Of a stretch of 64,000 nt of DNA, positions 11,814-60,728 are shown piece after piece; the first letter of the stretch is position 1; every line of letters begins with the position of its first letter. Position numbers and translations under genes: made by a program. Source of the DNA: Macrostomum lignano (taxonomy: Eukaryota); NCBI GenBank assembly GCA_002269645.1, contig NIVC01000136.1, positions 186,001-250,000 of the forward strand, in the 5' to 3' direction. The notes below the pieces were generated by a model. It was not told the origin of the DNA, searched no databases, and was given only the letters and a program-made list of their open reading frames with translations.

Positions 11814-11814
11814 C

Positions 11815-27899: not shown

Positions 27900-28831
27900 A
27901 GCGTTGGCTCTGCTGCTCTGCTCGCTGGCAGCCGGCCAGGTCTCCCAGTGCGCTCCCGCTGACTCTCCAAGGCTCCGCTTCGTGGCGCAGCTCAGCGTGA
28001 ACGGCTGCGCGCTGTTCGTGCACGACACGGGAGCGAGCGACGGTCCGCACTTGGCAGTCGAGCCGCTCATGTGCGTGACGGACAGCCTGAAAGGCATTGT
28101 TCCCCGATTCGACTTCATCACCCAGCAGCTGTACTTCAGCGTTCCGATATTGATGAAGGATGCTGGGATGCTTGCAGAGGCTCAGCGTCAACTGCGGCAT
28201 CTGTCACCGAGGTCTGTGAGCTTCGCCACGGTGGCAACGTTTAAAAGTTGACAAATGTGACTTTTAATGTGTCACATCTGTTGCACGTCTTATCAGGGAC
28301 GATGTCTCTTCTGAAAGACATGGCATTTCTGGCTCAATCGTCAACCAAACAGTATTCGCGTACCAAAATTTCGAGATTTTGGATGCATTCGAAATACTTG
28401 TTTGTTATTTTAAATGCGTGCTCATTTGTATTTTTGTTCTTTTCATTCCTTCGCAGCCCTGTGCCGTTTAAAAAAGTAATTGACGACTTCCAGGACTGCT
28501 GTGCTGGCGGGGCCCGCTGACCTGTGGCGACACGTGCAGTGGCGGGTGACATCGCTGGTTGCTGAGCAGTGCATCTCTAAGTCCAGCCAAATCACTTCAT
28601 CATGGAGAATGAAACCGCCTGTAAGCGACAGCTGCTTCAGTCTGAAGTCCTGCGCCAGGCTGCAATGTGCCTAAGCTCAACGCACAGCGAACTCTTCCAG
28701 TGCGGTTCAACTGCAGCCAGACGGTCGCTGCTTCCTGAAGATTCAGCAGCGACTTACTGGCAGAGTGAGTTTTCAGCGAAACTGGACTGAGTACGAGACT
28801 GGGTTCGGTGACGGCACTGACTTCTGGATAG
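27900..28831 (+). pseudogene. Copy A of the repeat-domain/FReD gene: partial exon 1 (27900-~28235) and exon 2 (28494-28831)
   Basis: Near-identical to B/C; lacks promoter and ATG; exon 1 cut after FATV; TAA at 28672; exon 3 absent. Confidence 0.9.
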
Positions 28832-29885
28832 GTGAGCGTGCGTCAGGAACTGAAGCAGGTCTTATCAACTGCCATAGGAGAGTCATTTAGGCCGTACAAT
28901 TAATAACGTTCGTTGGTTGGTGGCTCTGTAAATTTTAGCTAAACTTTTTTTTCTTACATCTTTTCCAGCTTTTCGAAACTTGTATGCCTTCATCTTAAAA
29001 AATTGTATTTATATTTTATATGTGTAAGTATTCCTCTGTAGGCTCTGCGCTGAATTGGATGTCATGATACAAACAAGTAATTTTTCGTTCGACGCTCGTA
29101 TCCAACAAACAACAGCAACAACAACAAAGTACGCAGCCCAGCATGCAAGTCACAGTTAGAGCAGGACATGTCAGATGGCGCGTCCCAAATCTTAAGAGCA
29201 GACGAAGTTCGCCCCGTTGGCAGTGTCGGGCTCCCAGCGTCGCATAGTATACATTAAATTATTAAGCTGAATAAATGAAACTTTATTGAAATAAAGTCAT
29301 GACAGAACTTTATTGTGGCACAAAAGCACGAAAAACATTACAGGCTAGAAACCTGCCTTATATTGAAACTATTTGTTATCGATTTACTGACCCACCGCAA
29401 CCCCCAACCCGCGCTAGCAAAGTACATGCAGCGAGAGAGAGAGTCACCAAAACAACCTAACCCAACACCCGCCCCGGCGCGCACGCAGGCCAAGCTACCA
29501 CATCCCTCCATGCCAAGACAAAAGCAACAGAACTTGCAAAAAAAGAAAAACCCTCCACCAAAGAAAACAATCAGTCACTGTCAGATAAGTTCACTCGTAG
29601 GTCAGTCGCCCTTGTGGTCCTCTCTGAACGCCGCAGCATCTGCGGCGGCGGCAGCGGCGGCGACGGCGGTGGCGGCGGCGGCGGCGGTCGTGGCGCTTCA
29701 GACGTTGTCACCGACGGAGACAGCTGCCGTGGCCCCGCCCCGCCTGACTGGCCCAATCCTGCCGCTTGCTCAGGTGGGATGATCGCCGGCACCAGGTGGT
29801 TGGCATGCCGCCGCACGATACGCTCGTCGGGCAGGCGGCACTCGTAGGACAGCGGCCCGGTCCGCCGGCTCACGGAGGCCGGTGC

Positions 29886-31073
29886 CTACTTCTCCGGACC
29901 ATTGAAGTCACGCACCAGGACACCGTCGTCTTCTTCGAAGTTGCGATCCCTGGCTCGCAGTTCGTGGTACTCCTTTTGCGAGTCCTGACTGCGCCTGACT
30001 GTAGCAGAGACATCGGGCCGCACAATGTCTAGAAGCGTCCGCAGCTGCCTGCCCATCATCAGCTGGCAGGGTGGAGCACCGGTTGTGCTGTGCGGAGTGA
30101 CCCGGTAGGTCAGCAGGAACCGAGCTAGCCGAAACTGCAGGGACGCCGGCCGCCCCTTCGCCAGGGCCGCCTTTACCGTCTGGACCACTCGCTCGGCCAA
30201 ACCATTGGACGATGGATGATATGGAGCCACTTTGATGTGCCGGATGCCGTTACTGGCCAAGAAGTTGCTCATCTCTTGGCTCACGAAATTCGGACCGTTG
30301 TCACTCACTACCACCTCTGGCAATCCCAGCTGACTGAAAGTCCTTCTCAGCCGATCGATTGTGGCAGCACTGGTGGCGGACTGGCAAATGTGGACTTCAA
30401 TCCATTTCGAATGAGCGTCCACCAGTACTAACAGCATTTTTCCCTCGACTGGTCCAGCGTAGTCCATATGGATCCGGGACCACGGTTTGTCCGGCCACGG
30501 CCACGGCTGCAGGAGAGCAGGCGGCGGGCAGTTCTGATGACGCTGGCACTCGCCACAGTTCTGTGACAGCTGCTCGATGTCCCGGTCCAATCCCGGCCAC
30601 CAGAAATATCCTCGGGCCAGGGGCTTCATCCTTGAAGCTCCTTGGTGGCTCTGATGTAGACAGTCGAGCAGCGCTTGTCGTCCCTGAACCGGCACAATCA
30701 CACGGTTGCCCCACAGCAGGCAGCCGTCCTCCAGGCTCAGTTCTGCAGCCTTGACCGCGTACCGCTGCAGTTCCGCATCCAGCCGAGGACGCTCCGGCCA
30801 TCCACTCTGTACGAGCCGCAGCACTCGACTGAGCAGCGGGTCCCGCCTTGTCCAGCCGCGAACCTGAGCAGCCGTCACGGATCGCTCATTGAGCGCATCG
30901 ATGAGCAGCACTACCTCAGCCGGTGAGGGCGTCTCCACTGACTTCGTCGGCAGCGGCAGCCGACTCAGAGCGTCAGCCCGCAGTAGCGAAGTTCCCTTGC
31001 GACACTGCAGTCGATACGAGTAGTTCGAAAGCAGCAGAGCCCAGCATTGGATCCTTGCTGAAGCCAGTGGTGG
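29886..31073 (-). pseudogene. pol: RNase H end and integrase of the second Gypsy element
   Basis: PLASARIQCWALLL; HQSH..CGEC; HMDYAGP, SDNGPNF, GLAERVV. Confidence 0.93.
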
Positions 31074-32119
31074 TGATGTGTTCCTTATTACCCGACTTTT
31101 GGTAATCAAAGAACACTCACTTCTAGCTCAGTAGCTAGGCAACCCAGTACGTCAACAGAAGGTATTCAATTACCTTGAGTCCTTAACTGAGAGCTCTCGT
31201 CAATACTCCTTGTTCGTTGATCTCGTTATCAGTAGCGTTCCTGTCCTTCAGGAATTCCGGGCGCCGGTCAACAGTTGATCTGGTCCGCTCTTGCAATTGT
31301 CTCCTTGACTTCTTGCAGGCCGGTTATCTGTAGTTCGGACCAATCGGAAGCTTCCAAGTTAACAATGGGGATCCCTGCGCCAAACTGCGGTTTAATATAA
31401 GCCTACTCCTTCTAGCAGTGCCTCTATGCACTCTAGGTATAGCTCCGGAAACCACTGATAGTCTTCTAAGATCTATCAGGGGCAGTCCTTCTGGAGACTG
31501 CAACCAGTAGAGTCTAGACAGACTCAGGAGTCTCAACAGACTCAAACTAAACTCCAACGAGACGTCTCAAAACACAGGCGCAAATGAGTAAGGCTTACCG
31601 CAAGAACTCGACGAGTCTTCTGTAGGAAGTCCTGTAGTGGCTTCCTCTTCGGAGCTCTTCTCCTTCCGGAGGAATTGTGGCTCCGGGTCCGTTCCGGACC
31701 ACTTGTATTTATAGGCGTTCAGACCTCTCTCGAGGTCGTACATCACTGTCTTCGCAAATGTCAAAGGGTCACGATTCGGTGGCTGTCAAGCATGACAGGG
31801 TAGAAAGTTGCGCAACTAGTCTACTGTAAAAGCGCATGATTGGTTACCGTAGCTGGTAGACTTTGATTGGTTCATCCGGGTGCAACCCGAGTGCAAACCA
31901 AATGATGACTTGAAGGTGGGGTTTGAATTGACAGTTGTTGGTCGCACCTGATTGGGTGATTTCTAAAATTAGCATGCTCGAGATTTCTCTCTTTCTATTG
32001 GTTAATTTGAATATATGTATGGTTCAGCGCATATCCTTATACATGCTCCTCAAATTACTACTATTTAAGTAGTACGTTAACAATTTTATGTCTTCTTACG
32101 GGAGGCAGAACACTCTACA
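31074..32119 (-). mobile_element. Solo LTR (1046 bp) inserted in pol
   Basis: TG...CA ends; exact 4-bp TSD GTGG (31070-73, 32120-23); removal restores KAIPPLASAR; minus-strand CCAAT boxes then TATAAATA (31706-13). Confidence 0.9.
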
Positions 32120-34472
32120 GTGGAATGGCCTTGCTCTCGTGTAGCTGGCCCAGTAGCGGCTTGTGATCACTCTTGAGCTCGAAGGTTTTGCCATAGAGGT
32201 AGGCGTGGAAGTGCTTGATCCCAAAAATGATCGCCAGGGCTTCTTTCTCTGTCTGCGAATAGTTCCTCTCGGCGTCGGCGAGCGATCGGGAAGCAAAGGC
32301 AATCGGCCTTTCAAGGCCATCAATCCGGTGGCAGATAACGGCCCCGACCCCGTATGGCGAACTATCGCACTCCAGAATCATCTCCTTTTTGACGGCGAAA
32401 TGGACAAGCGCCTGCGGGCTCAGTAGCAGCTCCTTGCTGCGCCGGAAAGCATCGGACTGTGCTTCGCCCCATCGCCAGACAGTTCCTTTCTCGAGAAGCC
32501 GGTGCAGAGGAGCCAGAACGCTGGACAGGTTCGGCAGAAATCGGCCGTAATAGTTGAGGAGGCCCAAGAAACTCCGCAACTGCGTGACGTCCTTTGGCAT
32601 CGGCGCGTCAACGATCGCGTTGACTTTGTCACTCATCGGGTGCAGGCCCTGGACGTCAATCCGATGCCCCAAATAGGTAACCGAATTCTCCATGAAGCGG
32701 CACTTGTCAAGCCGGCACTTCAGCCCAGCATCCTTCAGGCGCTGCAGGACGATCTCCAGATTCTCGAGGTGCTCAGCATCATCGGCGCCGGTCACCAGCA
32801 CGTGATCAATGAAGTTTGCCGTATGCTTTGCGCCTTGCAGCAGGCCGTCCATGGTCCTCTGGAAGATTCCAACTGCTGGTGAGATTCCAAACGGTAGTCT
32901 CGTATACCTCAGCAAACCCTTCGAGGTGTTGATGGTGCACAGGCGCTGGGACTCTTCATCGAGCGGAAGCTGCATGTATGCCTGGCTGAGGTCCAGCTTG
33001 GTGAACTTTTGGCCGCCGGTGAGCTTGGCGAACAACTCCTCAATCCTTGGCAGCGGGTAGCAGTCCATCTCCACGTCCTGGTTTACCGTGTACTTGAAAT
33101 CTGCGCAGATTGTGATGGAGCCGTCCGACTTCAGCACCGGCACGATTGGGGACGCATACTCCGAATCGGAGACCGGCCGCAGAATGCCCTGCTGGATCTT
33201 CCGCTCGAGCTGCTCTTCCACCTTGGACTTCAAAGCGAAGGGCACCTGCCGCGCCTTCATGAACTTGGGTCGCGCCCCAGGCTTCACTCGCAGTTTCAGA
33301 GGTTCATCCGTGTAGCAGCCGAGGCCACTCGAGAAAACGGGGCTGAACCTCTCTAGCAACTTCTGCACTTGCTGATCCTTTGGAGCCGACGCTTCGGGCA
33401 GCTGCTTGACGCTCTCCCAATTTAACGGCAGCACAGCCAGCCAGTTCCTACCGATGAGGCTGGAACTGGATCCAGATACCACTAGAAGAGGAAGAAGCTG
33501 CTTGGCTTTACCTGGAATCTCTGCAGACACGCTGATCTGACCAAGCACGCTGACTGGCTGTCCGCAGTAGTTCCGCAGCCGAATCGGGGTCCGCTCGAGC
33601 TCAGGAGCCCCGCCCAGCAGATCGTGATAGGCTCTAGCCGATATCAGCGATACAGCCGCGCCCGTGTCGATCTCCATCTGGCAGGACACTCCGTTGAGCA
33701 GGACCATGGTGATGTACGGCGGCACTTTGGCAGCTGCACTGGGCAAGGTGTTCAGGGAGCCGCAGTCTTGGCTTTCCTCCTCCACGGCGGCGACTTGCGA
33801 CCGCGGCTCAGCTCCAGCCGAATCCGCGCCTCCTAGACAGGCTGCAGTGGTGTGCCCCATCTTGCCGCACTTGAAACAGGCCTTCTTCATGAATGGGCAC
33901 TTCGCCGCCAGGTGTTTTGCAGACAGGCACCTGTAGCACCTTTTCGCTGGTCGCTGAGTCGCTACCACATTGGTCTGGCCGACTTGGTCTACCGATGCTG
34001 CCGAGGCGTGGCGGCTTGCGGAGTTCCTGCGGACTAGTCCTTGACCAAGTTGCAGCTATTGGTTGCCAGCTCCACCGCCTGGGAGATCGCCAGTGCTCTG
34101 TCCAGGTCCAACTCTGTCTCGGACAGGAGTCTGCGCTGTATGTGATCATCTTGGATTCCAAGCACCAGACGATCTCTCAGCATGGTGCTCAAGCTGTTTC
34201 CGAAGTTGCAGTGGACAGCCAAACGCCGCAGTGCCGCCAAGAAGTCGGCCACGGACTTTGAGCTCTCTCGAACGCGCTGGTAGAAGTGGAACCTTTGCAC
34301 GATCTCTGACGGCTTTGGGTCCCAGTGATCGTCAAGCTTTTTGCAGATGTTAGCGAAGGAAGCCTCTGAAGGCTTAACTGGGGCCAGAAGACTGGTGACA
34401 AGCCTATAGGTGTCCTTGCCGCACAAGCTGAGGAATACCGCTCGCTTCTTCTCTTCGCTTTCGATTTCGTTT
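32120..34472 (-). pseudogene. pol: gag-PR-RT-RH of the second Gypsy element
   Basis: CYRCLSAKHLAAKC / CFKCGKMGHTTAAC; EIDTGAA; RT motif degraded to FIDH; frameshift near 34030; gag starts at (A)NEIESEEKKRAVFLSLCG. Confidence 0.93.
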
Positions 34473-37079: not shown

Positions 37080-38219
37080 ATGCAGCTCTTTCAGTTGCGA
37101 GTTTCTGCAGCGTTGGCTCTGCTGCTCTGCTCGCTGGCAGCCGGCCGCCAGGTCTCCCAGTGCGCTCCCGCTGACTCTCCGCGGCTCCGCTTCGTGGCGC
37201 AGCTCAGCGTGAACGGCTGCGCGCTGTTCGTGCACGACACGGGAGAAAGACGGTCCGCACTTGGCAGTCGAGCCGCTCATGTGCGTGACGGACAGCCTGA
37301 GAGGCATTGTTCCCCGATTCGACTTCATCACACAGCAGCTGTACTTCAGCGTCCCTGTATTGATGAAGGATTCTGGAATGCTCGCAGAGGCTCAGCGTCA
37401 ACTACGGCATCTGTCACCGAGGTCTGTGAGCTTCGCCACGGTGACCAACATCAGCGTCTCAGCCGACAGCCGCTCATCGGTTCGGGTTTTGGGCTTCCCG
37501 TGGACTCCAAATGAGTCAGTAGCCACTCTGAGACTCGGCTTCGGAGAGAAGATCACATATGAAGCCCTAAATCTACGAGCAAGCATGCTGGGACTGGCGA
37601 ATATCGACCAATTGACCAAAGTTTTTCTGTTACCAAACACTCATATAAGCAGACGAAATAAAATTGAAAATTCAACAATCGAGACTCTAAAAAATGTAAA
37701 ACTCTCAGCTACTCTTCTGTCGAATGGCTGTTTCCATGAGGTTCAGAGCCGCATCATGCTGCAAAACGACAGCTTCATCGAAGTCGGCTTGTACAGGAAA
37801 AAATTCTTACCCGTGTGCCAACAGCTGCGGTTCAGTCGGTACGTCAAACTCGAGAACTGCTCTGTCCGAGTGCACCAGAGACTCGACATCAAGGGCCACT
37901 TCCTCATTGAGCCTCTGCTGTGCCACAACATCTCCAGCTTGAGCAGCGAGTCAGTCAGGTATGACTACAGCCGAGACATGCACTACCTGAAGCTGGATCT
38001 AGTGCTGCAAGATGAGGCCACACGCGATTCTGTGAGGACTCAGTTGGCCGACTTGTCGCCTCGCTCGGTCGACTTCATGCGGCTGTGGACTGCTGAGAGA
38101 TCAGTGAGCTCTTCGTTGAGTGCTCGGTTCGAGGTCGGTCCGCTGATGGCGTCGACAGACTGGAGGTCCGCTCAGCTGCGGCTGCTCTGCGGAAACTGGA
38201 CGGAGTGCCGCGATCTCAG
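37080..38219 (+). pseudogene. Copy B exon 1: signal peptide + two-repeat domain, 2-nt frameshift at ~37245
   Basis: MQLFQLRVSAALALLLCSLAAG; ggagaaagacgg vs ggagcgagcgacgg in C; donor ctcAG|GTtggc. Confidence 0.8.
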
Positions 38220-38610: not shown

Positions 38611-38948
38611 GGCTGCTGTGCTGGCGGAGCCCGCTGACCTGTGGCGACACGTGCAGTGGCGGGTGACGTCGCTGGTTGCTGAGCAGTGCCTTTCCAAGTA
38701 CAGCCAAATCACTTCATCATGGAGAATGAAAGCGCTTGTAAGCGAGAGCTGCTACAGTCTGAAGTCCTGCGCCAGGCTGCAATGCGCCTCTGCTCAACGC
38801 ACAGCGAACTCTTCCAGTGCGGTTCAACTGCAGCCAGACGGTCGCTGCTTCCTGAAGATTCAGCAGCGACTTACTGGCAGAGTGAGTTTCCAACGAAACT
38901 GGACTGAGTACGAGACTGGGTTCGGTGACGGCACTGACTTCTGGATCG
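38611..38948 (+). CDS. Copy B exon 2: linker and FReD N-terminal part
   Basis: ttccAG|G acceptor; FLKIQQRLTGRVSFQRNWTEYETGFGDGTDFWIG; G|GTGAG donor. Confidence 0.88.
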
Positions 38949-39549
38949 GTGAGCGGCAGTTTTGAGTCAACTAATGTTGTGTGACGAGAGAGGTAGCAGA
39001 TTTTGTGAATCTTATATTGAAATGCTAGTTGACTCATAAGCAATGACAAAAGATGAATTGAAAGGTTAGCTTCTCGGCTAATTAAAGGAATGTTAACTTT
39101 CAGTTGCGCCATGACTGCAATGCTCTACATTGACCTTTCCCGCCTTATTGGCGTTTCGGGCTCTCGGCTGGCTTCAGTGAGTCAGGAGGCTACTGTCATT
39201 ATTTTCAACGAGCTCACCAAAAGATATTGATGAGATTCTCTAGTCTCAGGAAGTTTGGGATAATTTGCTCTAGTCTGTCTTTTACACGGCCAGGACCCCT
39301 AATAGCAAAAATAGTGTGTTTCAGTTAGCAAAAAAGTTTATCCAGGAGTTGTCAATGAAAAGGATTTGGACTCTCCATCCAGACAACAAAATTTTCGAAA
39401 AATAGAAGTCCCAAAACTAATCTGACGCGAAAAGCAGTAGAAAGCAGTTTAGTCCATTACCAGCTGTTCGAACAAAAAACTTGGGCTTGCTGTGTTGGCC
39501 ATTACACTGCATTTGCTGAAATGAAGCAGCACCAGCCAGAGCAGCAACA

Positions 39550-41066
39550 AACTTCATTGTGCATTCCCAAGTTCGGCACTGTAGCACTCCTAGACTCCTA
39601 GGCATTACCCTGGACCGTACGCTCAGCTTTAACGCGCACGTCAACGACATCTGCAGCAGAGTCCTGTCCCGCTGCCGCATGCTGTCCTGCCTCGCGGCTC
39701 GGGACTGGGGTTGGCGCAAGGAGCGCCTTCGCGGCGTCTACCTGGCTATGCAGCAGAGCCTTCTTAACTACGCGGCCCCGGCTTGGCAACCTTGGCTTTC
39801 CAGCTCCTCCTTCGAACGCCTTGAGCGCGCGCAAAACCAGGCCCTCAGAATCGTCACGGGCTTGCACCGCTCGGCGCCGCTTGACGCTGTGCACCTGGAG
39901 GCCGGCATCGGCAGCTACAGGAACACCAGCGACCGCCTTTGCCTCATCGCCAGGGAACGCGCGCTCAGGCTGCCCAACGACCATCCTCGCGCCATCGCCC
40001 TCTCGGGCACCGTGCAACACCGGCTCGCCCGCAGTAGCTGGAGACTCCGCTCGGCTCAGCTCGCCAATGGCCTTGGCATTGATCTCACGCCGCGTTTGCC
40101 GCTCACACCGGCCTTTCCATGCCCCTGGCTGGACCAACATCTCCCGGCGATCCTAGCTGACAATCCTTTGCCTCCGGCCACCACGCCCCCGTTGGAGCGC
40201 TGTCTTGCCGCTCTTGACGTCATCCGGTCTCACCCGGCTGAGCTCGTCATATACTGCGACGGTTCGGCGGCCGGCGGCTCCGAGGCTGGCGGGGCGGCCG
40301 CTGTGGTCACCATCGGAGACCCGGCAGTCCCGACGACCGTAAAAGTCCGCACGGCCGCTGGCAGCCGCTACACCAGCTCCTTTGAAGAGGAACTCCGCGC
40401 TCTGGTCCTAGCGCTCGACTACCTCCGCTCGCACCCCACGCGCTCTGCCATCATCTGCTCTGACAGTCAGTCTCTTCTGCGCGCCCTTCAGCGTCCCTTC
40501 AGCCGCCTGGCCTCTTCTCTCCGCTTCCCGCACAACTGTCGCGCCCTCCTGTGGGTCCCGGGTCATGTCGGCATTCCGGGCAATGAACTCGCGGACCGCG
40601 CTGCTAACTCCGCTGCCGCCATCGCCGATGAAGCACCGCGCCCCAGCATCAGTTTTCCCACTGCCGCCTCGGTGATCCGCCGCACTCTGGCGGACAAGCC
40701 GGTCACCCACGCGAGATCTCGTCTCACCTACGCCTCCGCCGACGCCGACAAGGAACGTCGGCTTATTACTAACCGCAAAGACGCTCTCCTTCTTGCCCGG
40801 CTGCGCTCCGGCCACTCCAGCCTCTTCGGAGCCTTCCGCGCCCTCATGGACCCCACGGTGGATCCGACCTGCCAAAAGTGCTCCCTCGAACCAGACACCC
40901 TTGAGCACTGGATAGCGTGCCCTGCTCTCGAGGCCGCCCGCCGTCGCTTCATTGGAGCTCCGATCTCCCTCAGCAACTTGTCCGATTACCCTGATGGTTT
41001 GGTCGCGCTGGCCAGGTTCTGTATGGATCCTGGGCGCGTTTGGGCCATCTAACAACAACAACAACA
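39550..41066 (+). mobile_element. 5'-truncated non-LTR retrotransposon (Ingi/I-like; RT C-terminus, RNase H, CCHC-like end) in intron 2 of copy B
   Basis: RLLGITLDRTL..WGWRKERLR..; YCDGS, ICSDSQS, WVPGHVGIPGNELAD; (CAA)n tail; 12-bp TSD agagcagcaaca (39538-49, 41067-78). Confidence 0.9.
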
Positions 41067-41675: not shown

Positions 41676-42091
41676 GTCTCTCCGCCATCCACTCGCTCAG
41701 CCAGGGCGGCGCCACCCTCAGAGTGGAGATGAAGCTGTGGAGCGGCTCTGAGCTGCATGCGGAGTACGCAGGATTCCAGGTGGGAGACGCCAGCACTGGG
41801 TATCGGATGACGTACCGAGAGATGCTGAGCCACAGGTCCAGTGTCAGCTGGAATGCTCTGGAGCTCAGCAAAGACATGCGGTTCTCCACGATGGACAGGG
41901 ACAATGACATATGGGGTGCTTCGTGCTCAAGCCGTTATGGAAAAGGAGGCTGGTGGTTTAAAGACTGCCATCAATGCAACCCTAGCGGACGCTTTCCTAG
42001 GCGAGACACACCAGATTCCAGATATATGGTCTGGTACTCTGGCTCTTTCTGGCTGTCTCTTCGTGAAATGTGGCTGCTGCTGCAGATTTGA
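41676..42091 (+). CDS. Copy B exon 3: FReD C-terminal part
   Basis: cccgcAG|GT acceptor; GLSAIHSL..LRVEM..AEYAGFQVGDA..FSTMDRDND..C..GGWWFKDC. Confidence 0.92.
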
Positions 42092-43005: not shown

Positions 43006-43039
43006 AGGTTTTTTTCAGAGTTATGACATAATTTATGCA

Positions 43040-44766: not shown

Positions 44767-47700
44767 CTATGGACGAAGGGTTGGCGCCGCCCAGGGAGGT
44801 CCCCCAGTGTCGCCAGCAGCTATGGTGCTCTTTGGAAAGGAGAGTTCAGCCCTGCGGGTGGCCCGGAGGTAGCGCATGAGCTGGTTAAAGTTTTCGGGTT
44901 TGCACGCTTCAGTAATAGATGTGTGTGGCCCGAGGTAAGTGAGTCTGGCTCGCGTAAAGGCGGGACAGATGCTGACGAAATGCTCAGCGGTTTCGTCACC
45001 TGAGTTACAGAAACTGCAGATGGCGTTGGTGGCGTTGCCCTGCAGGTACTGGTGCCTAGAGAAGCAGCCGTGACCTGAGAGGGTCATGGTGGTAGCCTGG
45101 ATGTCTCTGCGTGAGAGGCACAAGAGGAGCTTCCGGAGCTGGTGAGAGGGTTGAGGGACAGCGCCTCTGGATTGCCTGCAGTTCGTGCGGTTCGCCCAAG
45201 TCGAGCGGTGCTGAGTCCTGATCCACGCTTTGATGCGCGAGTCGATGACACAGCCAGGAATCGGGACAAGGGGTTCGGGACCGAGAGAGGAGCCGGAGGC
45301 GCCAACTTTCGCAAGGGCGTCAGCCAACTCATTCCCTCGGATCCCCACATGCCCCGGAACCCACTTGAGGGTGATTTTGTTGGTGGAGCCCAACATGTTG
45401 AGGAGTTTGATACAGTCGAGGACTTTAGCAGAATTGGTGCTGCAGCCGCTGATGGCGTGCAAGGCAGCTTGGCTGTCCGAATGGAAAGTGATGTTGTTAC
45501 CGGTAACGCCAGTGGCGAGGAGCTCTGCGGTGCAGGAGCTGATGGCAAGAACTTCATTTTGGAAGACACTAGAGTTGACCCCAGTGTACTGAGCTTGGGT
45601 TGCGATAACCCTCCCGTTCAGGAAGATTCCAACACCAAAACCGGTGTTGTCTGACTGCTTAGAACCATCGGTGTAGCAGTGAAGCTCACCAGGGTTCCAG
45701 TGGTCATAGAGAGTATCTCGCGAGTCGATAGCTACGGAGTAGCGTTGTCTCAGGTTGAGCGTTGAGGCAATGCCATCGGTGAAGACCCGATTGGCCTGAC
45801 ACTCGTTGAGGATGTTGATGCACAGGTCGCTATGCGGGACGAGGTTCCGCTTAGCAAGTGCCCTCATGTAAAGGAATTTGACACCGGCATAAAGTAAACG
45901 CCCGGTCGTTCTAGCCGCCTCACCCCTGACGAAGAGGTCAAGAGGCGGTAGATTAAGGAAGGCCCCCATGCCGGCAAAAGGCGTGGACCTGGTGGCGTTG
46001 CAGATAAGCCTACACGCTCTGCCCTGGATCGTGTTGAGCAAATCTGCCTGGGTAGCGCTAACCCAGACAACCGAGGCGTACGTCATGGCAGGTCTAACTA
46101 CGGAAGTGTAGATCCACCAAAGCCGTTTTGGGGATAGACCCCAAAAAGTGTCAAATGCTCGACGGAGCTGGGCCAGGATGGCTGAGGCACGCTAGGCTTT
46201 TGCTTTCACGTGGAAGGACCAGTTGAGCCGGTGGTCAAGTATGACCCCGAGACATCTGGTCTGGTGCGCGAAGGCAGTATCTCTGCCGTAAAGCTGCAGA
46301 GGTCGTATGTTCCAGCGTATTCTGCTGGTGAACATAATGGCAACAGTTTTGGGCTCAAAGAGTTCCAGACCGTTGTTATTGGCCCAGGATTCTGCTTCGC
46401 GGATAAAGCTCCGCATCAGATCCCTGAGCGTGCTGGAGGACGGCCCAGCCACAATGGCAGTGACATCGTCAGCATACCCGACTTTGAAGACGGGATCAGG
46501 TCAGGAGTCACCCAGAAGAGCGTCCATGACCAGGTTCCAGAGCGTCGGGGTGAGGACTCCGCCTTGGGGTCCACCCTTACAGACTCTGGCGGAGGCAGTT
46601 TGCCCAAGAAGTTGGGCAGTGACCGTACGGTTGGAGATCATGTACATGATCCACCGTATGAGGGTAGCGTGAGCTTTGTGATTTTGAAGGGCCCTCTGAA
46701 ACGCTTCAAAGATAACGTTGTCGAAGGCGCCAACAATGTCGAGAAAAAGAGCCAGGGCGTTACCGTCACCCAGTACCGCCCGTTCAATCTTCTCGACTAT
46801 CGCATGCAGGGCGCTGTCAGTCGACCTCCCGGTACGGAAGGCGTGCTGATGATTGCTGAGAGGCATTGCTGTCAGCTCGCAAGAGAGCAGCCGCCAGAGA
46901 ATAAGCCTCTCAGTGAGCTTAAGCATTGCTGACGTTAAGCTAATTGGCCTAAAGGCCTTGACGCTCTGGTAGTCACCATTCCCAGGTTTGGGAATAAAGA
47001 CTACCCGAGCTTCAGTCCAGCATTTGGGAACGTATCCCAGCTGGATAGAGGCCCGCATAAGATTGCGGGTGAGTCTCAGGAACGAGGGTATCTTGGCTGC
47101 TTCACGAAGGAGAACAGGGTAGATACCATCAGGTCCAGGAGATTTGAAGGGTTTGAAGGTTCTGATCGCACGAGCGATTAGGTCTTCAGTGACAATGCCC
47201 GCCGCTAGGGTGGTTCCATCCATCGAATGGTTGGGCTCCGGTCTAGCAGTAGGTACCCTCGGGAAGAATGTGCTGAGCATATGCTGAAGCACTTCTTCAG
47301 GGTCTTTAGTAAGAGAGCCATCATCTTTTTTGATCATGGCTAATTTGAACATTTTGTCCATTGTAAGGGCCTTGACAAGCCTGGAAGTAGGTCTGTCTTG
47401 ATCCAATTCATTGCAGAATTGGCGCCACTTACATTCCTTGGCCTTGCGCACTTCAGATTTGAAATTGCGGGAGGCTTGCCGGAAAAGCTCCATGTCCTCC
47501 GGGTTTCCGGTCTTCATGGCACGGCGGTGAAGGCTTTTGGCCTTCCGCCTGAGTTTCCCCAGCTCCGGGTTTCATTACGGCGCCGAGGTCTTGCCTTTGT
47601 AGGCACGGACAGGGCAGGCCGCCTCATAGGCTGCAATAATGCAACCTGTCAGCGTCTCAGCCGCATGGTCCACATCCTCGCAGGTCTCAATCGGACGTAA

Positions 47701-48494
47701 GTCCGTGAGTTCCTGCAGGTGCAGATCAAGGGTAGCCTTATAGGCCGCCCAATCAGTGTTGCGGATGTTACGCCTCCAAGTAATCGAGGACTGGGGTTTA
47801 GTGTCCGCGATATTAAAGGCGATAAAGCAGTGGTCAGACAGGGAGGGCTCCTCAGACCAGACTCTCCACTCCTCAACTCTGTCAAAGAGTCTTGGGGTAA
47901 CGAGTGTGGCGTCAAGGACCTCAGTCCATCTGCCATTGTTAAAGGTAGGAGTGCTACCGCGGTTGCAGAGCATGAGGTTTGTGTTAGAGATAAGGGCCAG
48001 AAGCTCCTTCCCTCTAGTATTTGTGTCTTTGCTGCCCCAGTGCTTGTGGTGCGCGTTGAGGTCGCCCCCTAAGCACAGCTCAGCGTTCTGGACTCGCAGT
48101 ACTGCGCAAGGCGCAGTAAACTCTCGGGAGCAGGGTCTCTGTCGCCTGGGATGTAAACCGAGGCAACAAGACACGTACGCGGAGAGAAATGATTAGATTG
48201 GATGACGCAAAGATCTCCAGCAGAGAAATCAGTCCTCAGCCAAGCCTGGAGATGGCTAGCAGCGAGGATAGCCGCTCTAGGGCGGCTGTTCCCCGGGCCA
48301 CACACATAAAAATCAGAGTAGCCAGAGGGAATGTTGGGCAACTTACCGTTGCGCATCCAGGGTTCTTGGATCAGGATGAGGCCTGGCCTGTACAGCTCAG
48401 CAATCTTCATCAGATTTACTGACGCAGATACGCAATGCTGTAAATTTATTTGCAGACAGAATGTCGCTCCTTTGGCAGCGTGGAGCTTAGTCAT
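44767..48494 (-). pseudogene. LINE ORF2 (APE endonuclease, RT, RNase H, CCHC), split by about four frameshifts
   Basis: Track ORFs 48069-48494, 47575-48174, 46501-47517, 46192-46452 and 44767-46086 are colinear domains. Confidence 0.9.
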
Positions 48495-48533
48495 ACTGTA
48501 TTAAATGCAATGTCTGGCTAGAGCCCAGGGCCA

Positions 48534-50043
48534 TCAAGGAGACTTGGACAACAGATCGTCCTCGTCCCAGGCCGCTGGGGCTTGACTGGGAGATGGGAGT
48601 TGGTCGACGTCCATGGCCTCCTCACCCCCACCGGCCCCCCCCCCAGCAGAGTCCTCAGGCTCCGATGACAGGATGGAGGAAGCTTCCTCATCTGCATCTT
48701 TACCTTCAGACCCCACCAGGGTGGCCGAGGAGAGCTCGGATTCCGAAGACCCGGCCTCGTCCTCAACTCCTTCTCCGACTGGCAGGTTTGGTTTCCGGGG
48801 CTTGGCCGGAGCCGTTACCACGGTCGCCGAACTGCTTCTAGCAGAGGGGCGAGACGCAGCTTTGGCTTTGGGATAGGCTTGCGCCTTTCCTTGGGCCTTA
48901 GACTGCGCCCCGCTCTTGCCGGAGATGCCGGGGTTGGCAGTAGCCTTCCCTTTGGCAGACTTTCCTCGGCGCATCTTGAGCTTGAGGGCACCCAGCTGGA
49001 AAGAGGATCCATTAGGGTACCGACTCGCCCAAGCGTTGGAAAGGCCGAGGACAATTGAGTTGCCCGTCTCCCCCCTGCGGACTCGGCGGTGATACACCAG
49101 TCGACTAGCAGGGAGGTCGGGGTTCAGACGCAGTAGGACCCGGCGGATAACGTCTGGTCCAGCTGCGGTGCTCTTAGCAGGGACGAAAACCACATAGGGT
49201 ATCGTCTTTGGACGCTGGCCCTCGCGAAGAAAAAGAGCTCCACCAAGGTCAGCATCCAAGGAGACCGTCGGTAGCCGCAGGAGCAGCTGCCGAGCGTCCT
49301 CCTCGCTGCTAGGAGCAATAAGAACGAATGTGCTTCGCAGCACCATCCGCTCAATGCCGATGGAGATTCCCTCCTCGACAGTCAGCTCAATCAGATAGGA
49401 GTCAACAGCACTCCACACTTTTTGAAGCTGATCAGTGGTCCAGTCCTGGTCGCGACCTTGGATGATCACTCCCGGGATTTTGGCCTTGGCCTTTGCCGCA
49501 AAGGTAGCTCCCGAAGGAACCTCCTTGTTGGCAGTGGCCATTTGTTGCGCCGTGGTTTCGGCCTCAGCAGCCGCGGCAGCAGCTCCAGGGAGCGCCGCCG
49601 CTGAACTACTGGAGCTTCCACCGGCCGGCCCGCCTGGTTGCCTTGGGACTCCAGTCGCTTCAGCATCCATGGTGGACGCCGCCGCTTTGGCCCCCGCAGC
49701 TCCCTTCTTGGCATGCCTTTTGGCGCGTTGTTTAGCGCGTTTGCGCTCAAGCCGAGCCCGCTGAGCTTCATCGGATCTGCCAGATTTGGCCGGTCCTTTA
49801 GGCTCAGAGCTCGCGGTTCCCTTAGATCCACCAGCGGAGCTGGCAGGTCTTTGGGTATTTTGATTTTGGTAGCTCTGGTCGGATCTGCCAGCAGAGCCAG
49901 CCGGTCCTTCCTTTGCCACAGTTGAATCAGTCGGTTGGGATCTGCCAGCAGGGCCGGCCGGTCCTTTGGACTGAGGTTGGGGTTTAGAAGGGTCCCCGTC
50001 CCTAGAAATAGCTTGTTTATCCATAGTCGGCTCGAAGGCCATG
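48534..50043 (-). CDS. LINE ORF1 (basic, low-complexity ends; central region resembling Loa ORF1/DUF4780)
   Basis: Open ~500-aa frame from atcATGg directly upstream of ORF2; no zinc knuckle seen. Confidence 0.8.
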
Positions 50044-51011
50044 ATAAAAGGTTGGTGGGCCACCCTCAAAGGGGCGCGGTACCCACCGGCCGCTTCACTC
50101 GACCGGGCAGTAGGCCAATAGAACCCTCAAGGCTGGCCCGACACCAGGAGGGGGGACCGCTTGCAACCGGACTACTCCCCGGCCTTCCAGCCCATCGGCA
50201 CGGTCAACACCTTAGGCATTAGAGAGTACGTTGAGCAGTACCACGGCCTGCAGGTTGGCGAGCCAGACCCGCATACCCAAATTCGGCCGAAGCCACTGGA
50301 TAGGGTCGCCAGCGCCGGAGCCCAGTCTGTCCAGCAGCCCTAGGGACTGCCTTGAACACACACGGGGACGAGTACCCTGGGTCGACTTGCGAGACAGCGT
50401 GGGGGGGGGGTCTGCGGCTGCCGGAGGCAAATAGAGGGTGCAGACCTCCCACCAGCCTTGACCTGCTGAAGATAGGGGCAGGCGTGAAGCATCGCAGACC
50501 TTAGTCCAAAGGCCTGGTCTGTCTCATACTTCACTGGCATGCTGAATACGCCTTCGCGTGCGTTGGCAGACCTCACAAGTGAGGCAAATTTCATAAAGAG
50601 CTTTATCGCAGCTCTTGAAGCCTTTCATCCTTTCAGCTTGCAGACAATATGAATTTTACAAAAAAGTCAGGCCTTAGAAGTGGCCAATTAATTTTTATCA
50701 GACCTTTATATGAAATTTAACTATAGACTAGATATGCACTGCCTAGCAGGCAATGAAATTTTAAAGCTTTGTACATGTACATGCCTGAACCAAGACTCTG
50801 ATGATAAGGCTATTCATTTGTATGTGCATTCAGTTCATAAATGTACATTGAATCCAACCCATACCCCACCCCCCCCACATCCAGGCAAGGCAGTGCAACC
50901 CTTAAAACTAAAACACAGGTAGGCCTTGTCTGCTCCTAACTTCTCGAGGCCATAGTAGACAAAAATAAGTAATTAAGTAATAAAATAAAAATAACTTTAC
51001 TACAGATTGGC

Positions 51012-52620: not shown

Positions 52621-52794
52621 GCCTTTGTCTCCTCTGCAGCCAAACAGCTTGAGCTCGATCCTTCTAGTACGCTCGTATCATGTACATTGTATTGCAAAAC
52701 GATATACTAAAATTAAAAGCAACACAAGGCTGAGTGGAAACCTGATTTTTTTTTCATTCACACTTATTTGAGCCTGTACAGAGTCTGCTAATTA

Positions 52795-53165: not shown

Positions 53166-53195
53166 GAAGAGCTCGCCTTAGCACACTAGTGAGAG

Positions 53196-55671: not shown

Positions 55672-56759
55672 ATGCAGCTCTTTCAGTTGCGAGTTTCTGC
55701 AGCGTTGGCTCTGCTGCTCTGCTCGCTGGCAGCCGGCCAGGTCTCCCAGTGCGCTCCCGCTGACTCTCCGCGGCTCCGCTTCGTGGCTCAGCTCAGCGTG
55801 AACGGCTGCGCGCTGTTCATGCACGACACGGGAGCGAGCGACGGTCCGCACTTGGCAGTCGAGCCGCTCATGTGCGTGACGGACAGCCTGAGAGGCATTG
55901 TTCCCCGATTCGACTTCATCACCCAGCAGATGTACTTCAGCGTTCCTGTATTGATGAGGGATGCTGGGATGCTCGCAGAGGCTCAGCGTCAACTGCGGCG
56001 TCTGTCACCGAGGTCTGTGAGCTTCGCCACGGTGACCAACATCAGCGTCTCAGCCGACACCCGCTCATCGGTTCGGGTTTTGGGTTTTCTGTGGACTCCA
56101 AATGAGACAGTAGCCACTCTGAGACTCGGCTTTGGAGAGAAGAAAGTCAACCCAATAAGAGGTTTTGTGTTACAAAATACGCCGATTAAAAATCGGGAAA
56201 AAATTGAAAATTCAACAATCGAGACTCTAAAAAATGTAAAACTCTCAGCTACTCTTCTGTTGAATGGCTGTTTCCATGATGTCGACAGCAGCGTCATGCT
56301 GCAAAACGACAGCTTCATCGAAGTCGGCGTGTACAAGCAAAAATTCTTACCCGCGTGCCGACAGCTGCGGTTCAATCGGTACGTTAAACTCGCGAACTGC
56401 TCTGCCCGAGTGCACCAGAGACTCGACATCAAGGGCCACTTCCTCATCGAGCCTCGGCTGTGCCACAACATCTCCAGCTTGAGCAGCGAGTCAGTCAGGT
56501 ATGACTACAGCCGAGACATGCACTACCTTAAGCTGGATCTGGTGCTGCAAGATGAGGCCACACGCGATGCTGTGAGGACTCAGTTGGCCGACTTGTCGCC
56601 TCGCTCGGTCGACTTCATGCGACTGTGGACTGCTGAGAGATCGGTGAGCTCTTCGTTGAGTGCTCGGTTTGAGGTCGGTCCGCTGATGGCGGCGGCAGAC
56701 TGGAGGTCCGCTCAGCTGCGGCTGCTCTGCGGAAACTGGACGGAGTGCCGCGATCTCAG
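55672..56759 (+). CDS. Copy C exon 1: signal peptide + two-repeat unknown domain
   Basis: ATG at 55672; hydrophobic signal peptide; 1088 nt ending in a phase-2 donor AG|GT. Confidence 0.85.
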
Positions 56760-57122: not shown

Positions 57123-57463
57123 GGCTGCTGTGCTGGCGGAGCCCGCTGACCTGTGGCGACACGTGCAGTGGCGGGTGACGTCGCTGGTATCTAAGCAGTG
57201 CCTCCTAAAGTCCAACCGAATCACTTCATCATGGAGAATGAAGCCATCTGAAGATACAGTCAGCTGCTCCAGTCTGAAGTCCTGCGCCAGGCTGCAATGC
57301 GCCTCTGTTCAACGCACAGCGAACTCTTCCAGTGCGGTTCAACTGCAGCCAGACGGTCGCTGCTTCCTGAAGATTCAGGAGCGACTCACTGGCAGTGTGA
57401 GTTTTCAACGCAACTGGACTGAGTACGAGACTGGGTTCGGTGATGGCACTGACTTCTGGATCG
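57123..57463 (+). CDS. Copy C exon 2: linker and FReD N-terminal part
   Basis: In-frame join ..ECRDL-R-AAVLAEP..; FLKIQERLTGSVSFQRNWTEYETGFGDGTDFWIG. Confidence 0.88.
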
Positions 57464-59434: not shown

Positions 59435-59885
59435 AGTGTATACATGTATGGCATTAAAATGCAAACAGCGATGCAAGAAAATAAGAAAAATCCGTCTGTG
59501 GTCGCCACTTTTGAGATTGCAGGTGAGGTCTCTCAAAATTTTGGAGTGACGCAACTTACTCGTAGTTACGCCGCGGCAGACTTTAGTTGAGGAATGAAGT
59601 GGGGATTGGTGTGCGAGGGTTGGACGGATTAAAGCTATCCAGATCAGTTTTCTCGAATCTTTCCTCGTAAATTGCTCACTGGCGTATAGAGTGGCGACTT
59701 TTCAATGTTGCTGAGTATGTAATTTTTAAAGAAAAAACTGAGCACAACTAAAAGCGCTGCATAAACTGAGCGTGACGCAAATAAATGGGCGACGGCGCAG
59801 AAGCTAAGGCCCCCGCACCAGGACACCAGCTCATGCACGCAGAGCCAAGCACCCCCTCCCCCAAACAGCGCGGACAGATAATGGG
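59435..59885 (+). repeat. Old dispersed repeat homologous to 3580-3910 (inverted)
   Basis: See the 3580-3910 feature. Confidence 0.65.
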
Positions 59886-60312
59886 GAAGAGAGAACGCGT
59901 GCAAAGCGACACTGGCGGGGCAAAGGAGTAAAAACTGGTTAGGGACTTGTCTAAGCCATTCACAGACCAGCACATTACGGTATTCTCGCATACAATTCTA
60001 TATAGATAAGTGATGGCCCGGTCTTAGGTCTATTATTCAATGTTGAAACTCTGAGTTTTCAATGATAGGGCAGTCTGAGTTGAGGAGCAAAAAGGCCGTC
60101 CAACTGAAGCATCACCAGCTTTCAGGTTGGCTGCATCAGCAGAAGTCATTCGCGCATTAATCCAGATTTTCAGCACAAGACATGTCAAACGTTTTGCTAT
60201 ATAACCTTGTGCGTTGAAATATTTTCATGAACATCCGAATTTCGACTTACCTGACAGCAGCGGCGACAAGCCGAGCAGAAGTGACTCAGACTCAGCCGCT
60301 CTCCTCCCGCAG

Positions 60313-60728
60313 GTCTCTCTGCCATCCACTCGCTCAGCCAGGGCGGCGCCACCCTCAGAGTGGAGATGAAGCTGTGGAACGGCTCTGAGCTGCATGCGGA
60401 GTACGCGGGATTCCAGGTGGGAGACGCCAGCACTGAGTATCGGATGACGTACCGAGAGATGCTGAGAGACAGGTCCAGTGTCAGCTTTGACGCCTTGGAC
60501 CACCACAAAGTTATGCGGTTCTCCACGATGGACAGGGACAATGACATATGGGATGCTTCATGCTCAAACAGTTTTGGAAAAGGAGGCTGGTGGTTTAAAA
60601 GCTATCCCCACTTCAACCCTAACGGAATTTTTCCTTCAAAGGAGCCACGAGATATTAGCTATATGACCTGGTACACTGGCACTGGTTATCTGACTCTTCG
60701 TGAAGTGCGGCTGATGCTGCAGATTTGA
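60313..60728 (+). CDS. Copy C exon 3: FReD C-terminal part
   Basis: Phase-1 acceptor; FSTMDRDND..C..GGWWF; the three exons total 1845 nt (614 aa + stop). Confidence 0.92.

What the first reader, a model, noticed from the sequence alone, without database searches (positions are those of the whole stretch)
27900..60728. Tandem family of secreted proteins: novel duplicated domain fused to a fibrinogen-related domain
Conserved GT-AG sites join three exons in frame (phases 2 and 1) into signal peptide + ~335-aa unknown region + linker + FReD (614 aa in copy C). The ORF track shows them as unrelated ORFs. Known invertebrate FREP/ficolin/tachylectin-type lectins pair FReD with IgSF, collagen, coiled-coil or EGF parts; I do not recognise this N-terminal region as any of these. 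Three copies show birth-and-death states (intact, frameshifted, truncated). This is the best candidate for an undescribed recognition or defence system.
Basis: partly seen in the sequence, partly recalled or inferred. Interest (0 to 1): 0.8.

Follow-up and report, generated by a model that had tools for sequence, protein, structure and literature searches.

The report
Flatworm fibrinogen-type lectin genes with orphan domain
The window holds three tandem copies (one intact, two broken) of a large Macrostomum lignano gene family for secreted proteins that join two copies of a so far undescribed protein domain to a fibrinogen-type sugar-binding domain, which makes it a plausible but untested recognition family.

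Summary
In copy C, GT-AG introns join exons 55672-56759, 57123-57463 and 60313-60728 into a 614-aa secreted protein. It differs by 1 aa from the GenBank model BOX15_Mlig011340g2 of Macrostomum lignano. The C-terminus is a fibrinogen-related domain (FReD; Pfam E 3.5e-34).

The core has no Pfam, PDB-sequence or PDB-fold match, although its AlphaFold model is confident (pLDDT 93). A profile search of 1.84 billion proteins found 16 clusters. All are M. lignano or unnamed run and metagenome fragments.

- **New partner:** the same core occurs six times in ~1,300-1,460-aa proteins that end in a C-type lectin domain.
- **Family size:** the genome has at least 106 matching stretches, about 20 distinct close paralogs, and older subfamilies with the same architecture.
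- **Window copies:** A is a 5'- and 3'-truncated fragment beside transposons. B has a 2-bp frameshift that its 99.6%-identical twin lacks. C is open but lacks one conserved FReD cysteine.
- **Evolution:** paralogs show homogenised ends, a divergent centre and a replacement hot spot in a Cys-bounded loop.

An immune role is inferred, not shown. I rate it a new variant of a known kind, of moderate interest.

The parts
55672..56759 (+). Copy C exon 1. It holds the signal peptide (residues 1-22), core domain 1 (55774-56148), a variable and poorly modelled inter-core segment (about residues 146-226) and core domain 2 (56365-56757). The exon ends in phase 2 at CAG|GT.
57123..57463 (+). Copy C exon 2. 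Residues 363-435 are the extension of repeat unit 2 (motif EPxDLWRHVxW...C) plus a Cys-rich pre-FReD stretch. The Pfam FReD match starts at residue 436 (nt 57340). The exon ends in phase 1 at TCG|GT.
60313..60728 (+). Copy C exon 3. It holds the rest of the FReD, including the DRDND calcium-site motif and the P subdomain, and the TGA stop at 60726-60728. Tyr573 stands where the paralogs have the second Cys of the P-subdomain disulfide.
37080..38219 (+). Copy B exon 1. A 2-bp deletion near 37243 (GGGA--GAAAGAC against GGGAGCGAGCGAC) shifts the frame after residue ~53. The donor site is conserved.
   Evidence: the twin locus L004 is 99.6% identical and intact
38611..38948 (+). Copy B exon 2, with conserved acceptor and donor sites.
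39520..41052 (+). Fragment of a non-LTR retroelement (RNase H ORF) inside intron 2 of copy B.
41676..42091 (+). Copy B exon 3 (FReD). It keeps both P-subdomain cysteines (WWFKDCHQC).
27898..28239 (+). Copy A, a remnant of exon 1 covering residues ~10-123 (core 1 only). It has no in-frame ATG. The rest of exon 1 is deleted.
   Evidence: the same truncated form is at C1165:424420 and C2158:30675
28494..28831 (+). Copy A exon 2 equivalent. The acceptor and donor are kept, but no exon 3 follows.
26973..27815 (-). 280-aa ORF of a highly repeated element (at least 138 copies of ~90% identity in the genome, no Pfam match). It abuts the truncated 5' end of copy A.
29886..34471 (-). LTR-retrotransposon coding region (gag-like part, protease, RT, RNase H, integrase) between copy A and copy B.
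44767..50126 (-). ORFs of a non-LTR retrotransposon (RT, RNase H and upstream ORFs) between copies B and C.
42404..43000 (.). 23-bp minisatellite about 300 bp downstream of the stop of copy B. The same unit follows copy C, so it belongs to the duplicated unit.
61046..63185 (.). The same 23-bp minisatellite (93 copies) downstream of copy C.

Best explanation
These are members of a Macrostomum-restricted, tandemly amplified family of secreted, N-glycosylated, lectin-like proteins.

**Shown: architecture.**
- Each protein has a signal peptide and then two repeat units.
- Each unit has an orphan ~130-aa alpha+beta core (five strands, a helix, three strands) with a conserved Cys pair and an E-P motif. 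A helix-hairpin extension that carries a Cys follows the core.
- A C-terminal FReD comes last. It keeps the DxDxD calcium-site motif and the GGWW/NPNG P-subdomain motifs, but the first ~35 positions of the canonical A subdomain are not recognisable.

**Inferred: mechanism.**
- The FReD P subdomain is the ligand-binding end, probably for glycan or acetyl groups and calcium-dependent.
- The orphan units act as a stalk, a second binding surface or an assembly module. They would take the role that IgSF, collagen or coiled-coil parts play in other FReD lectins.
- The same unit is also used six times in front of a C-type lectin domain. That fits a general 'presenter of carbohydrate-recognition domains'.

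**How the family diversifies.** It grows by tandem duplication and transposon-mediated decay. Both ends of exon 1 are homogenised, probably by gene conversion. The inter-core segment, a Cys-x5-Cys loop and the FReD P subdomain vary between paralogs.

**Most likely role (inferred).** Extracellular recognition of non-self or other glycan-bearing surfaces.

**State of the window copies.** Only copy C could be functional, and even C has lost one conserved disulfide cysteine.
For: **Gene model.**
- Searches give the exons. One search shows identity to the transcript-derived GenBank model (annotation method: PMC5730564).
- The splice sites are conserved in copy B.

**FReD.** Pfam gives 119 bits. PDB sequence matches to fibrinogen alphaE C, angiopoietin-related, ficolin and tenascin FReDs reach E 1e-25 to 1e-17.

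**Secretion.** The only hydrophobic stretch is N-terminal, and there are 10 NxS/T sequons.

**Repeat nature.**
- The two halves match at E 3e-9.
- A core HMM finds two cores in each FReD member, one in P0028 and six in P0020 and P0021.

**Extension homology.** An HMM of the inter-core segments of the C-type-lectin proteins hits the segment right after core 2 in most FReD members, at E 1e-4 to 2e-3 for the seven best.

**Orphan status.**
- There is no Pfam match and no PDB sequence match.
- AlphaFold gives pLDDT 92.9 and pTM 0.81 for the core. The best Foldseek match in the PDB has E 0.22 and TM no higher than 0.35.
- A profile search of 1.84e9 representative proteins returns 16 hits. The named ones are all M. 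lignano. The rest are unnamed: two Logan run assemblies and three JGI metagenome fragments.

**C-type-lectin relatives.** Pfam Lectin_C matches P0020 and P0021. A collinear homolog at 49% identity comes from another sample, so the architecture is maintained.

**Family size and array.** One search gives the matches and about 20 clusters at 98% nt or more among the 30 best loci. Paralogs at 25-48% identity keep the architecture.

**Mosaic evolution.**
- dS is 0.01-0.1 at the ends of exon 1 and 0.3-1.2 in codons 141-240.
- In the Cys-x5-Cys loop almost all changes are non-synonymous, while the flanks are nearly invariant.
- Protein-level variation peaks at residues 146-250, 356-362, 406-435 and 556-605.
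Against: - No expression, localisation, induction or binding data were found for any member.
- The variable inter-core segment is poorly modelled (pLDDT below 50). Its variability may therefore be plain lack of constraint.
- dN/dS of exon 3 between copies B and C is 0.87, from one pair of which one is a pseudogene. That value does not separate relaxed from diversifying selection.
- Copy C lacks a conserved structural Cys, so the one open copy in the window may be impaired.
- The extension homology rests on weak E-values against a 13-sequence set.
- Fold novelty was tested against the PDB and BFVD only. AlphaFold DB was not available. One BFVD model, an uncharacterised Medusavirus protein, reaches TM 0.60.
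Confidence: 0.5

Rival explanations
1. The molecules are the same, but the job is not immune. They would be lineage-specific secreted proteins of reproduction (seminal fluid, egg or sperm coat), adhesion, mucus or extracellular matrix. The FReD and the orphan units would mediate self-self or matrix binding.
For: - Vertebrate FReD proteins such as tenascins, angiopoietin-like proteins and fibrinogen are among the best PDB matches.
- The family is lineage-restricted and evolves fast. Reproduction-related genes in Macrostomum are reported to evolve in that way (title and abstract of PMC7336406).
- No immune evidence exists.
Against: - Pairing of the same unit with two different carbohydrate-recognition domains (FReD and C-type lectin) points to glycan recognition.
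- So do the large tandem arrays and the variable P subdomain, although neither excludes a reproductive target.
Confidence: 0.3
2. All three window copies are dead or dying remnants. Function resides only in paralogs elsewhere, so the window shows the decay side of the family and no working gene.
For: - Copy A lacks its start, most of exon 1 and exon 3.
- Copy B has a frameshift and a retroelement in intron 2.
- Copy C has Tyr in place of the conserved second Cys of the P-subdomain disulfide, which leaves an odd number of Cys.
- Exon 3 dN/dS between B and C is 0.87.
Against: - Copy C has a full open frame, intact splice sites and a transcript-derived GenBank model.
- Its near-identical twin on another contig is also open (L002).
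- The frameshift in B could be an assembly error or a change in one redundant genome copy.
Confidence: 0.15
3. The gene model is an artefact. Exon 1 would be a separate gene that ends at its own stop at 56790, and the FReD exons would belong to another transcript.
For: Exon 1 read through the donor site reaches a stop after 10 more codons. An intron-retaining short isoform cannot be excluded.
Against: - The order N-domains, extension, FReD is kept in paralogs at 25-48% identity that have different intron positions.
- It is also kept in at least 19 annotated proteins.
- The extension that belongs to unit 2 lies in exon 2.
- The splice sites are conserved.
Confidence: 0.03

Closest known systems
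Gastropod FREPs (Biomphalaria glabrata fibrinogen-related proteins: one or two IgSF domains, an interceding region and a FReD)
   Same: - Signal peptide, then one or two copies of an N-terminal repeated domain, a connecting segment and a C-terminal FReD.
- A large multigene family with signs of sequence exchange and diversification.
- Secreted.
   Different: - The N-terminal units are not IgSF. There is no Ig Pfam hit, and the confident single-core model does not match Ig folds.
- The immune role is shown for FREPs and not here.
- The start of the FReD A subdomain is not recognisable in this family.
Ficolins, tachylectin-5, FIBCD1 (acetyl-group-binding FReD lectins)
   Same: The FReD has the calcium-site motif DxDxD, the GGWW motif and an (N)PNG motif. 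PDB sequence matches to ficolin-1, -2 and -3 and to FIBCD1 reach E 1e-22 to 1e-18.
   Different: - There is no collagen-like Gly-X-Y region, no transmembrane anchor and no short Cys-rich N-terminus. About 435 aa of orphan repeats stand in their place.
- The residue after the second P-subdomain Cys is His in acetyl-binding FReDs (from memory). Here it varies between paralogs: H, M, Y, L, R, P.
M. lignano proteins with six orphan units and a C-type lectin domain (BOX15_Mlig001894g2, Mlig001890g2, Mlig001546g1; P0021, P0034, P0035) and their homolog P0020 from run SRR30276812
   Same: They have the same core domain and the same inter-core extension, a signal peptide, and a carbohydrate-recognition domain at the C-terminus.
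   Different: They have six units instead of two and a C-type lectin domain instead of a FReD. They are kept as a few copies with a 49%-identical collinear homolog in another sample, not as a large tandem array.
Uncharacterised protein A0A7S7YF07 of Medusavirus stheno T3 (BFVD model)
   Same: It is the only structural match above TM 0.5 for the core model: TMq 0.60, rmsd 5.0 over 129 columns, Foldseek probability 1.00.
   Different: The E-value is only 0.02 and identity is 17%. Its function is unknown and the profile search found no sequence relation. Treat it as a lead only.

Membership tests
Fibrinogen-related domain (Pfam PF00147, Fibrinogen_C) | Profile match above the Pfam gathering score | tested here: met
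   119 bits against a cut-off of 22, residues 436-597. All paralogs tested also match.
Fibrinogen-related domain (Pfam PF00147, Fibrinogen_C) | Calcium-site motif DxDxD followed by the conserved P-subdomain disulfide (Cys...GGWW..Cys) | tested here: inconclusive
   The motif DRDND is present. The first Cys (C560) is present. The second is Tyr in copy C and in P0001 but Cys in all other paralogs read. The column is aligned to Cys of fibrinogen alphaE C.
Fibrinogen-related domain (Pfam PF00147, Fibrinogen_C) | Complete A subdomain (profile positions 1-35 with its disulfide) | tested here: not met
   Pfam matches start at profile positions 34-39 in every member. A Cys-rich stretch that does not match the profile precedes them.
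Mollusc-type FREP (IgSF + FReD) | One or two immunoglobulin-superfamily domains N-terminal to the FReD | tested here: not met
   No Ig-family Pfam hit at E up to 5 in 37 members. The two-domain model gave only non-significant Ig-like hits. The confident single-core model gave none.
Ficolin | Collagen-like Gly-X-Y repeats N-terminal to the FReD | tested here: not met
   The 614-aa sequence has no Gly-X-Y run and no Collagen Pfam hit.
C-type lectin (Pfam PF00059) | A Lectin_C domain in the protein | tested here: not met
   The window's genes have none. It is present only in the six-unit relatives P0020 and P0021.
Immune pattern-recognition receptor (functional class) | Binding to microbial ligands, or induction on challenge | not testable with these tools
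   No expression or binding data in the searched literature or supplements.

The most novel reading that the evidence does not exclude
The orphan core is a new protein fold that macrostomid flatworms use as a general scaffold for carbohydrate-recognition domains (FReD and C-type lectin). The tandem FReD subfamily would then be a diversifying non-self recognition repertoire. Gene conversion would keep a constant frame, while a Cys-bounded loop and the FReD binding face are selected to differ. That would make it a flatworm counterpart of snail FREPs built on a different scaffold.
Probability: 0.25. Interest if true: 0.7.

Novelty: new variant of a known kind. Interest (0 to 1): 0.5.

Why it matters
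- **Open field.** Almost nothing is known about how free-living flatworms recognise microbes. M. lignano is a transgenic model, so a large secreted FReD/C-type-lectin family on a shared lineage-specific scaffold is a testable candidate.
- **A domain to describe.** The core domain gives a confident model with no Pfam or PDB relative. It deserves a family entry and a structure.
- **A natural comparison.** The mosaic pattern (homogenised ends, divergent centre, replacement-only loop) offers a comparison with the diversification of snail FREPs.
- **If it is not immune.** It would still be a clear case of a new domain recruited twice to lectin modules.

Tried and rejected
- **Ig-like fold for the N-domain.** The two-domain model gave weak Ig-like hits (gamma-adaptin ear, Fc, ZP-N). 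These vanished with the confident single-core model. Rejected.
- **Pfam at lenient thresholds.** A scan of 37 members gave only scattered chance hits.
- **Profile of the core against PDB sequences.** Nothing below E 0.5.
- **Exact-sequence look-ups.** Looking up P0013 and P0017 to fetch their loci failed, because records of this genome are withheld.
- **Fetching more genome.** Exon 3 of most paralogs and the rest of the C-type-lectin genes could therefore not be read as DNA.
- **Expression evidence.** Searches for gene identifiers and 'fibrinogen' in the main texts of the paper library and in the supplements of three M. lignano expression papers found nothing.
- **Orthologs of the single-core member.** A search with P0028 found only P0028 itself.
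- **UniProt names on fragmentary members.** 'PHM7_ext', 'SHR-BD' and 'CAP10' sit on fragmentary or differently assembled models of the same cluster. I did not scan those proteins and gave these names no weight.


Full report
**Where the window comes from.**
- Every homolog of the copy C protein that carries a name is from Macrostomum lignano.
- The window is G000:C136:186001-250000 of a 764-Mb, 5,269-contig assembly. That matches the published Mlig_3_7 assembly (PMC5730564).
- That paper reports that the assembly is redundant, with 180 Mb in non-repetitive blocks at least 95% identical. It also reports that the GenBank gene models derive from a genome-guided RNA-seq transcriptome.

**Check of the observation: copy C.**
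- Reading the sequence and assembling it gives three exons: 55672-56759, 57123-57463 and 60313-60728.
- The boundaries are CAG|GT, CAG|G, TCG|GT and CAG|G. The phases are 2 and 1, and the product is 614 aa plus a stop.
- GenBank protein P0001 (BOX15_Mlig011340g2, 'partial') has the same sequence apart from one residue and uses the same joins.
- Pfam finds only Fibrinogen_C, at residues 436-597 (E 3.5e-34, profile positions 35-205 of 221).
- PDB sequence matches are FReDs of fibrinogen alphaE, gamma and beta chains, angiopoietin-related proteins, ficolins, tenascins and FIBCD1. None extends N-terminal of residue 436.

**Check of the observation: copies A and B.**
- A tblastn of copy C against the window and a DNA alignment map the other two copies.
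- Copy B has exon 1 at 37080-38219, exon 2 at 38611-38948 and exon 3 at 41676-42091, with all four splice sites conserved. A 2-bp deletion near 37243 shifts the frame.
- Copy A keeps only residues ~10-123 (27898-28239) and an exon 2 equivalent (28494-28831). It has no in-frame ATG, no 3' part of exon 1 and no exon 3.

**What the N-terminal region is: a repeated unit.**
- The two halves of exon 1 are homologous (BLASTP E 3e-9).
- An alignment with paralogs of all degrees of divergence (A2; A3) defines a core of ~130 aa. Its pattern is h-R-F...G/N-C...V-H...E-P-h-h-C...D...Y-h...h-L-x-D...(helix)...S-V-x-F...L-R-h-x-C-x5-C-x2-L.
- A core HMM finds two cores in typical members, one in P0028 (452 aa), and six each in P0020 and P0021.
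- In the six-core proteins each core is followed by a ~70-aa segment of the form C..L...L......LLFERh.h.h......C.
- An HMM of that segment, built without the core residues, hits the stretch right after core 2 in most FReD members. In copy C that stretch is EPADLWRHVQWRVTSLVSKQC, in exon 2. The E-values are weak (1e-4 to 2e-3 for the seven best) but the position is consistent.
- So the 'linker' is most likely the extension of unit 2. The unknown region is then two ~200-aa units rather than a domain plus a linker.
- In divergent paralogs an extra intron separates the two units (L034).

**Is the core a known family?**
- No Pfam family matches copy C, the six other family members scanned or any of the 37 rows of alignment A2 at E up to 5.
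- A profile of the core finds nothing in PDB sequences.
- AlphaFold2 on exon 1 gave pLDDT 73, with core 2 at 85-96 and the inter-core segment below 50. On core 2 alone, with 24 diverse cores as alignment, it gave pLDDT 92.9 and pTM 0.81.
- The secondary-structure order is five strands, a helix, three strands and a short terminal helix.
- Foldseek of this model against 350,542 PDB chains gave no hit better than E 0.22, and TM-scores of 0.35 or lower.
- The weak Ig-like hits seen with the two-domain model were not reproduced.
- Against BFVD, one uncharacterised Medusavirus stheno protein reached TMq 0.60 at E 0.02. This is a lead, not an identification.
- AlphaFold DB was not available, so I do not claim a new fold. 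My claim is narrower: no described family and no solved relative.

**Distribution.**
- A profile of A2 was scored by HMMER against 1.84 billion representative proteins. It gave 16 hits at E 0.001 or better.
- Of the ten looked up, five are M. lignano, two come from Logan assemblies of sequencing runs (P0020, P0030) and three from JGI metagenome contigs (P0027, P0031, P0032).
- P0020 comes from run SRR30276812, as a 4,758-nt contig with one full ORF. P0031 and P0027 lie on one 1.5-kb contig of JGI sample 3300040801.
- P0020 is collinear with the M. lignano six-core proteins at 49% identity. That architecture is therefore conserved between organisms.
- No FReD-type member was found outside M. 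lignano. No other flatworm or phylum appears.

**The C-type lectin relatives.** P0020 and P0021 (BOX15_Mlig001894g2) end in a Pfam Lectin_C domain (E 1.5e-11 and 2.9e-9). The orphan unit is thus joined to two unrelated carbohydrate-recognition domains. This is the strongest indirect argument that the family deals with glycans.

**Family size and the array.**
- Exon 1 of copy C finds 106 stretches in the genome, which is a lower bound.
- On contig C136 the same-strand array runs from 213898 (copy A) through 223080 (B), 241672 (C), 261763, 277221, 289289 and 301125 to 311829. Two minus-strand copies lie at 71971 and 483168.
- Contigs C3268, C3286, C1165 and C2158 carry parallel arrays.
- The 30 best loci fall into 20 clusters at 98% nt identity or more. 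Redundancy of the assembly therefore explains only part of the count.
- Subfamilies at 25-48% identity (C142, C888, C1326, C209, C64, C236, C87, C434, C164) keep the order units, extension, FReD.

**State of the window copies.**
- Copy B is 99.6% identical over 4.1 kb to C1165:432449, where the frame is open. The frameshift is either a recent lesion in one redundant genome copy or an assembly error.
- Its intron 2 holds a retroelement fragment with an RNase H ORF.
- Copy A's truncated form (residues 10-123) is also present at C1165:424420 and C2158:30675, so the truncation predates those duplications.
- Its 5' end abuts a 280-aa ORF that occurs at least 138 times in the genome at ~90% identity. 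An LTR retrotransposon follows its exon 2.
- Copy C is open, but where all other paralogs read WWF..C it reads WWFKSY. That column aligns with the Cys of the P-subdomain disulfide in fibrinogen alphaE C.
- The mature protein of copy C has 15 Cys.

**Pattern of variation.**
- Among 16 close paralogs, dS along exon 1 is 0.01-0.1 in codons 1-80 and 241-360, but 0.3-1.2 in codons 141-240.
- This fits homogenisation of the ends, probably by gene conversion among array members, around an older and divergent centre.
- Part of that centre is poorly modelled (pLDDT below 50 for about residues 157-179 and 213-228 of the protein), so its variability may be neutral.
- Within the homogenised 3' end, the five residues between Cys353 and Cys359 differ between paralogs almost only by non-synonymous changes. 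Examples are GNWTE, GNLME, GTFTK, GNLRS, RTLTE, TTSLQ and GSSGL. The 15 codons upstream are nearly invariant.
- This is a small but clean signal of selection for change.
- Protein entropy also peaks at residues 406-435 and in the FReD P subdomain at 556-605.
- From memory, the position four residues after the first P-subdomain Cys and the position after the second Cys contribute to the acetyl-binding pocket of tachylectin-5A and FIBCD1. Both positions vary here. I did not test this correspondence.
- Exon 3 dN/dS between B and C is 0.87, which is uninformative on its own.

**Interpretation.**
- Shown: a secreted, glycosylated, two-unit + FReD architecture; its orphan core; its C-type-lectin cousins; its amplification, decay and mosaic evolution.
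- Inferred: the FReD binds glycan-type ligands; the units serve as stalk, assembly or second binding module; the family functions in extracellular recognition, possibly of microbes.
- Cys27, just after the signal peptide, has no obvious partner in the unit pattern and could link chains. This is speculation.
- A reproductive or matrix role is the main rival and cannot be separated from the immune reading with sequence alone.

**Novelty.**
- The genes are annotated but uncharacterised, and no paper in the searched library discusses them.
- FReD lectin families with variable N-terminal partners are a known kind. The partner here, and its reuse with a C-type lectin domain, are new.
- I therefore rate it a new variant of a known kind, with moderate interest (0.5).

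Noticed in passing
window 26973-27815 (- strand): A 280-aa ORF with no Pfam match. It is present in at least 138 copies of about 89-93% identity across the genome, and most of them are open. It looks like the protein of an abundant, apparently young, unclassified mobile element. It sits exactly at the truncated 5' end of copy A and also next to copy A's counterpart on C1165.
   Followed up: partly
window 42404-43000 and 61046-63185 (also the ORF-like frames at 42342-43096 and 60969-61809): The same 23-bp minisatellite (consensus TGTTCTATCAGTA[C/T]TGTGCTGTC, as reported for the copy B array) lies about 300 bp downstream of the stop codons of copies B and C. It is therefore part of the duplicated unit, and it could promote unequal crossing-over in the array.
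   Followed up: no
BFVD entry A0A7S7YF07 (Medusavirus stheno T3), against the core model of window 56365-56757: This is the only structural match above TM 0.5 for the orphan core (TMq 0.60, rmsd 5.0, probability 1.00, E 0.02, 17% identity). It raises the possibility that a giant-virus protein has the same fold. The sequence could not be fetched here.
   Followed up: no
L043 (Logan SRR30276812 contig 10165) and L044 (JGI 3300040801, Ga0450804_3087745): Relatives of the orphan domain occur outside the M. lignano records. One is a full six-unit C-type lectin protein, 49% identical to the M. lignano one. The other is a metagenome contig with two adjacent domain-bearing ORFs. The source organisms are unknown.
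   Followed up: partly
window 37243 against L004 (C1165:432449-433588): The twin of copy B is 99.6% identical over 4.1 kb and lacks the 2-bp deletion. This is a handy test case for whether redundant copies in this assembly differ by real lesions or by assembly errors.
   Followed up: partly
window 11768-16999 (+) and 29886-34471 (-): Two LTR-retrotransposon coding regions with long open gag-pol frames (protease, RT, RNase H, integrase). A non-LTR element with open RT and RNase H ORFs lies at 44767-50126 (-). The array is heavily invaded by apparently young elements.
   Followed up: partly
window 20996-22177 (+) and 24145-25425 (-): Two long ORFs (393 and 426 aa) upstream of the array with no Pfam match. 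The second is rich in coiled-coil-like, acidic sequence. They were not examined further.
   Followed up: no
window 1-1500, 5108-6124, 8711-9413, 51011-52141, 52784-53166: Several further long minisatellite arrays, with units of 29, 20, 23, 52, 10 and 44 bp. This agrees with the high tandem-repeat content reported for this genome.
   Followed up: no
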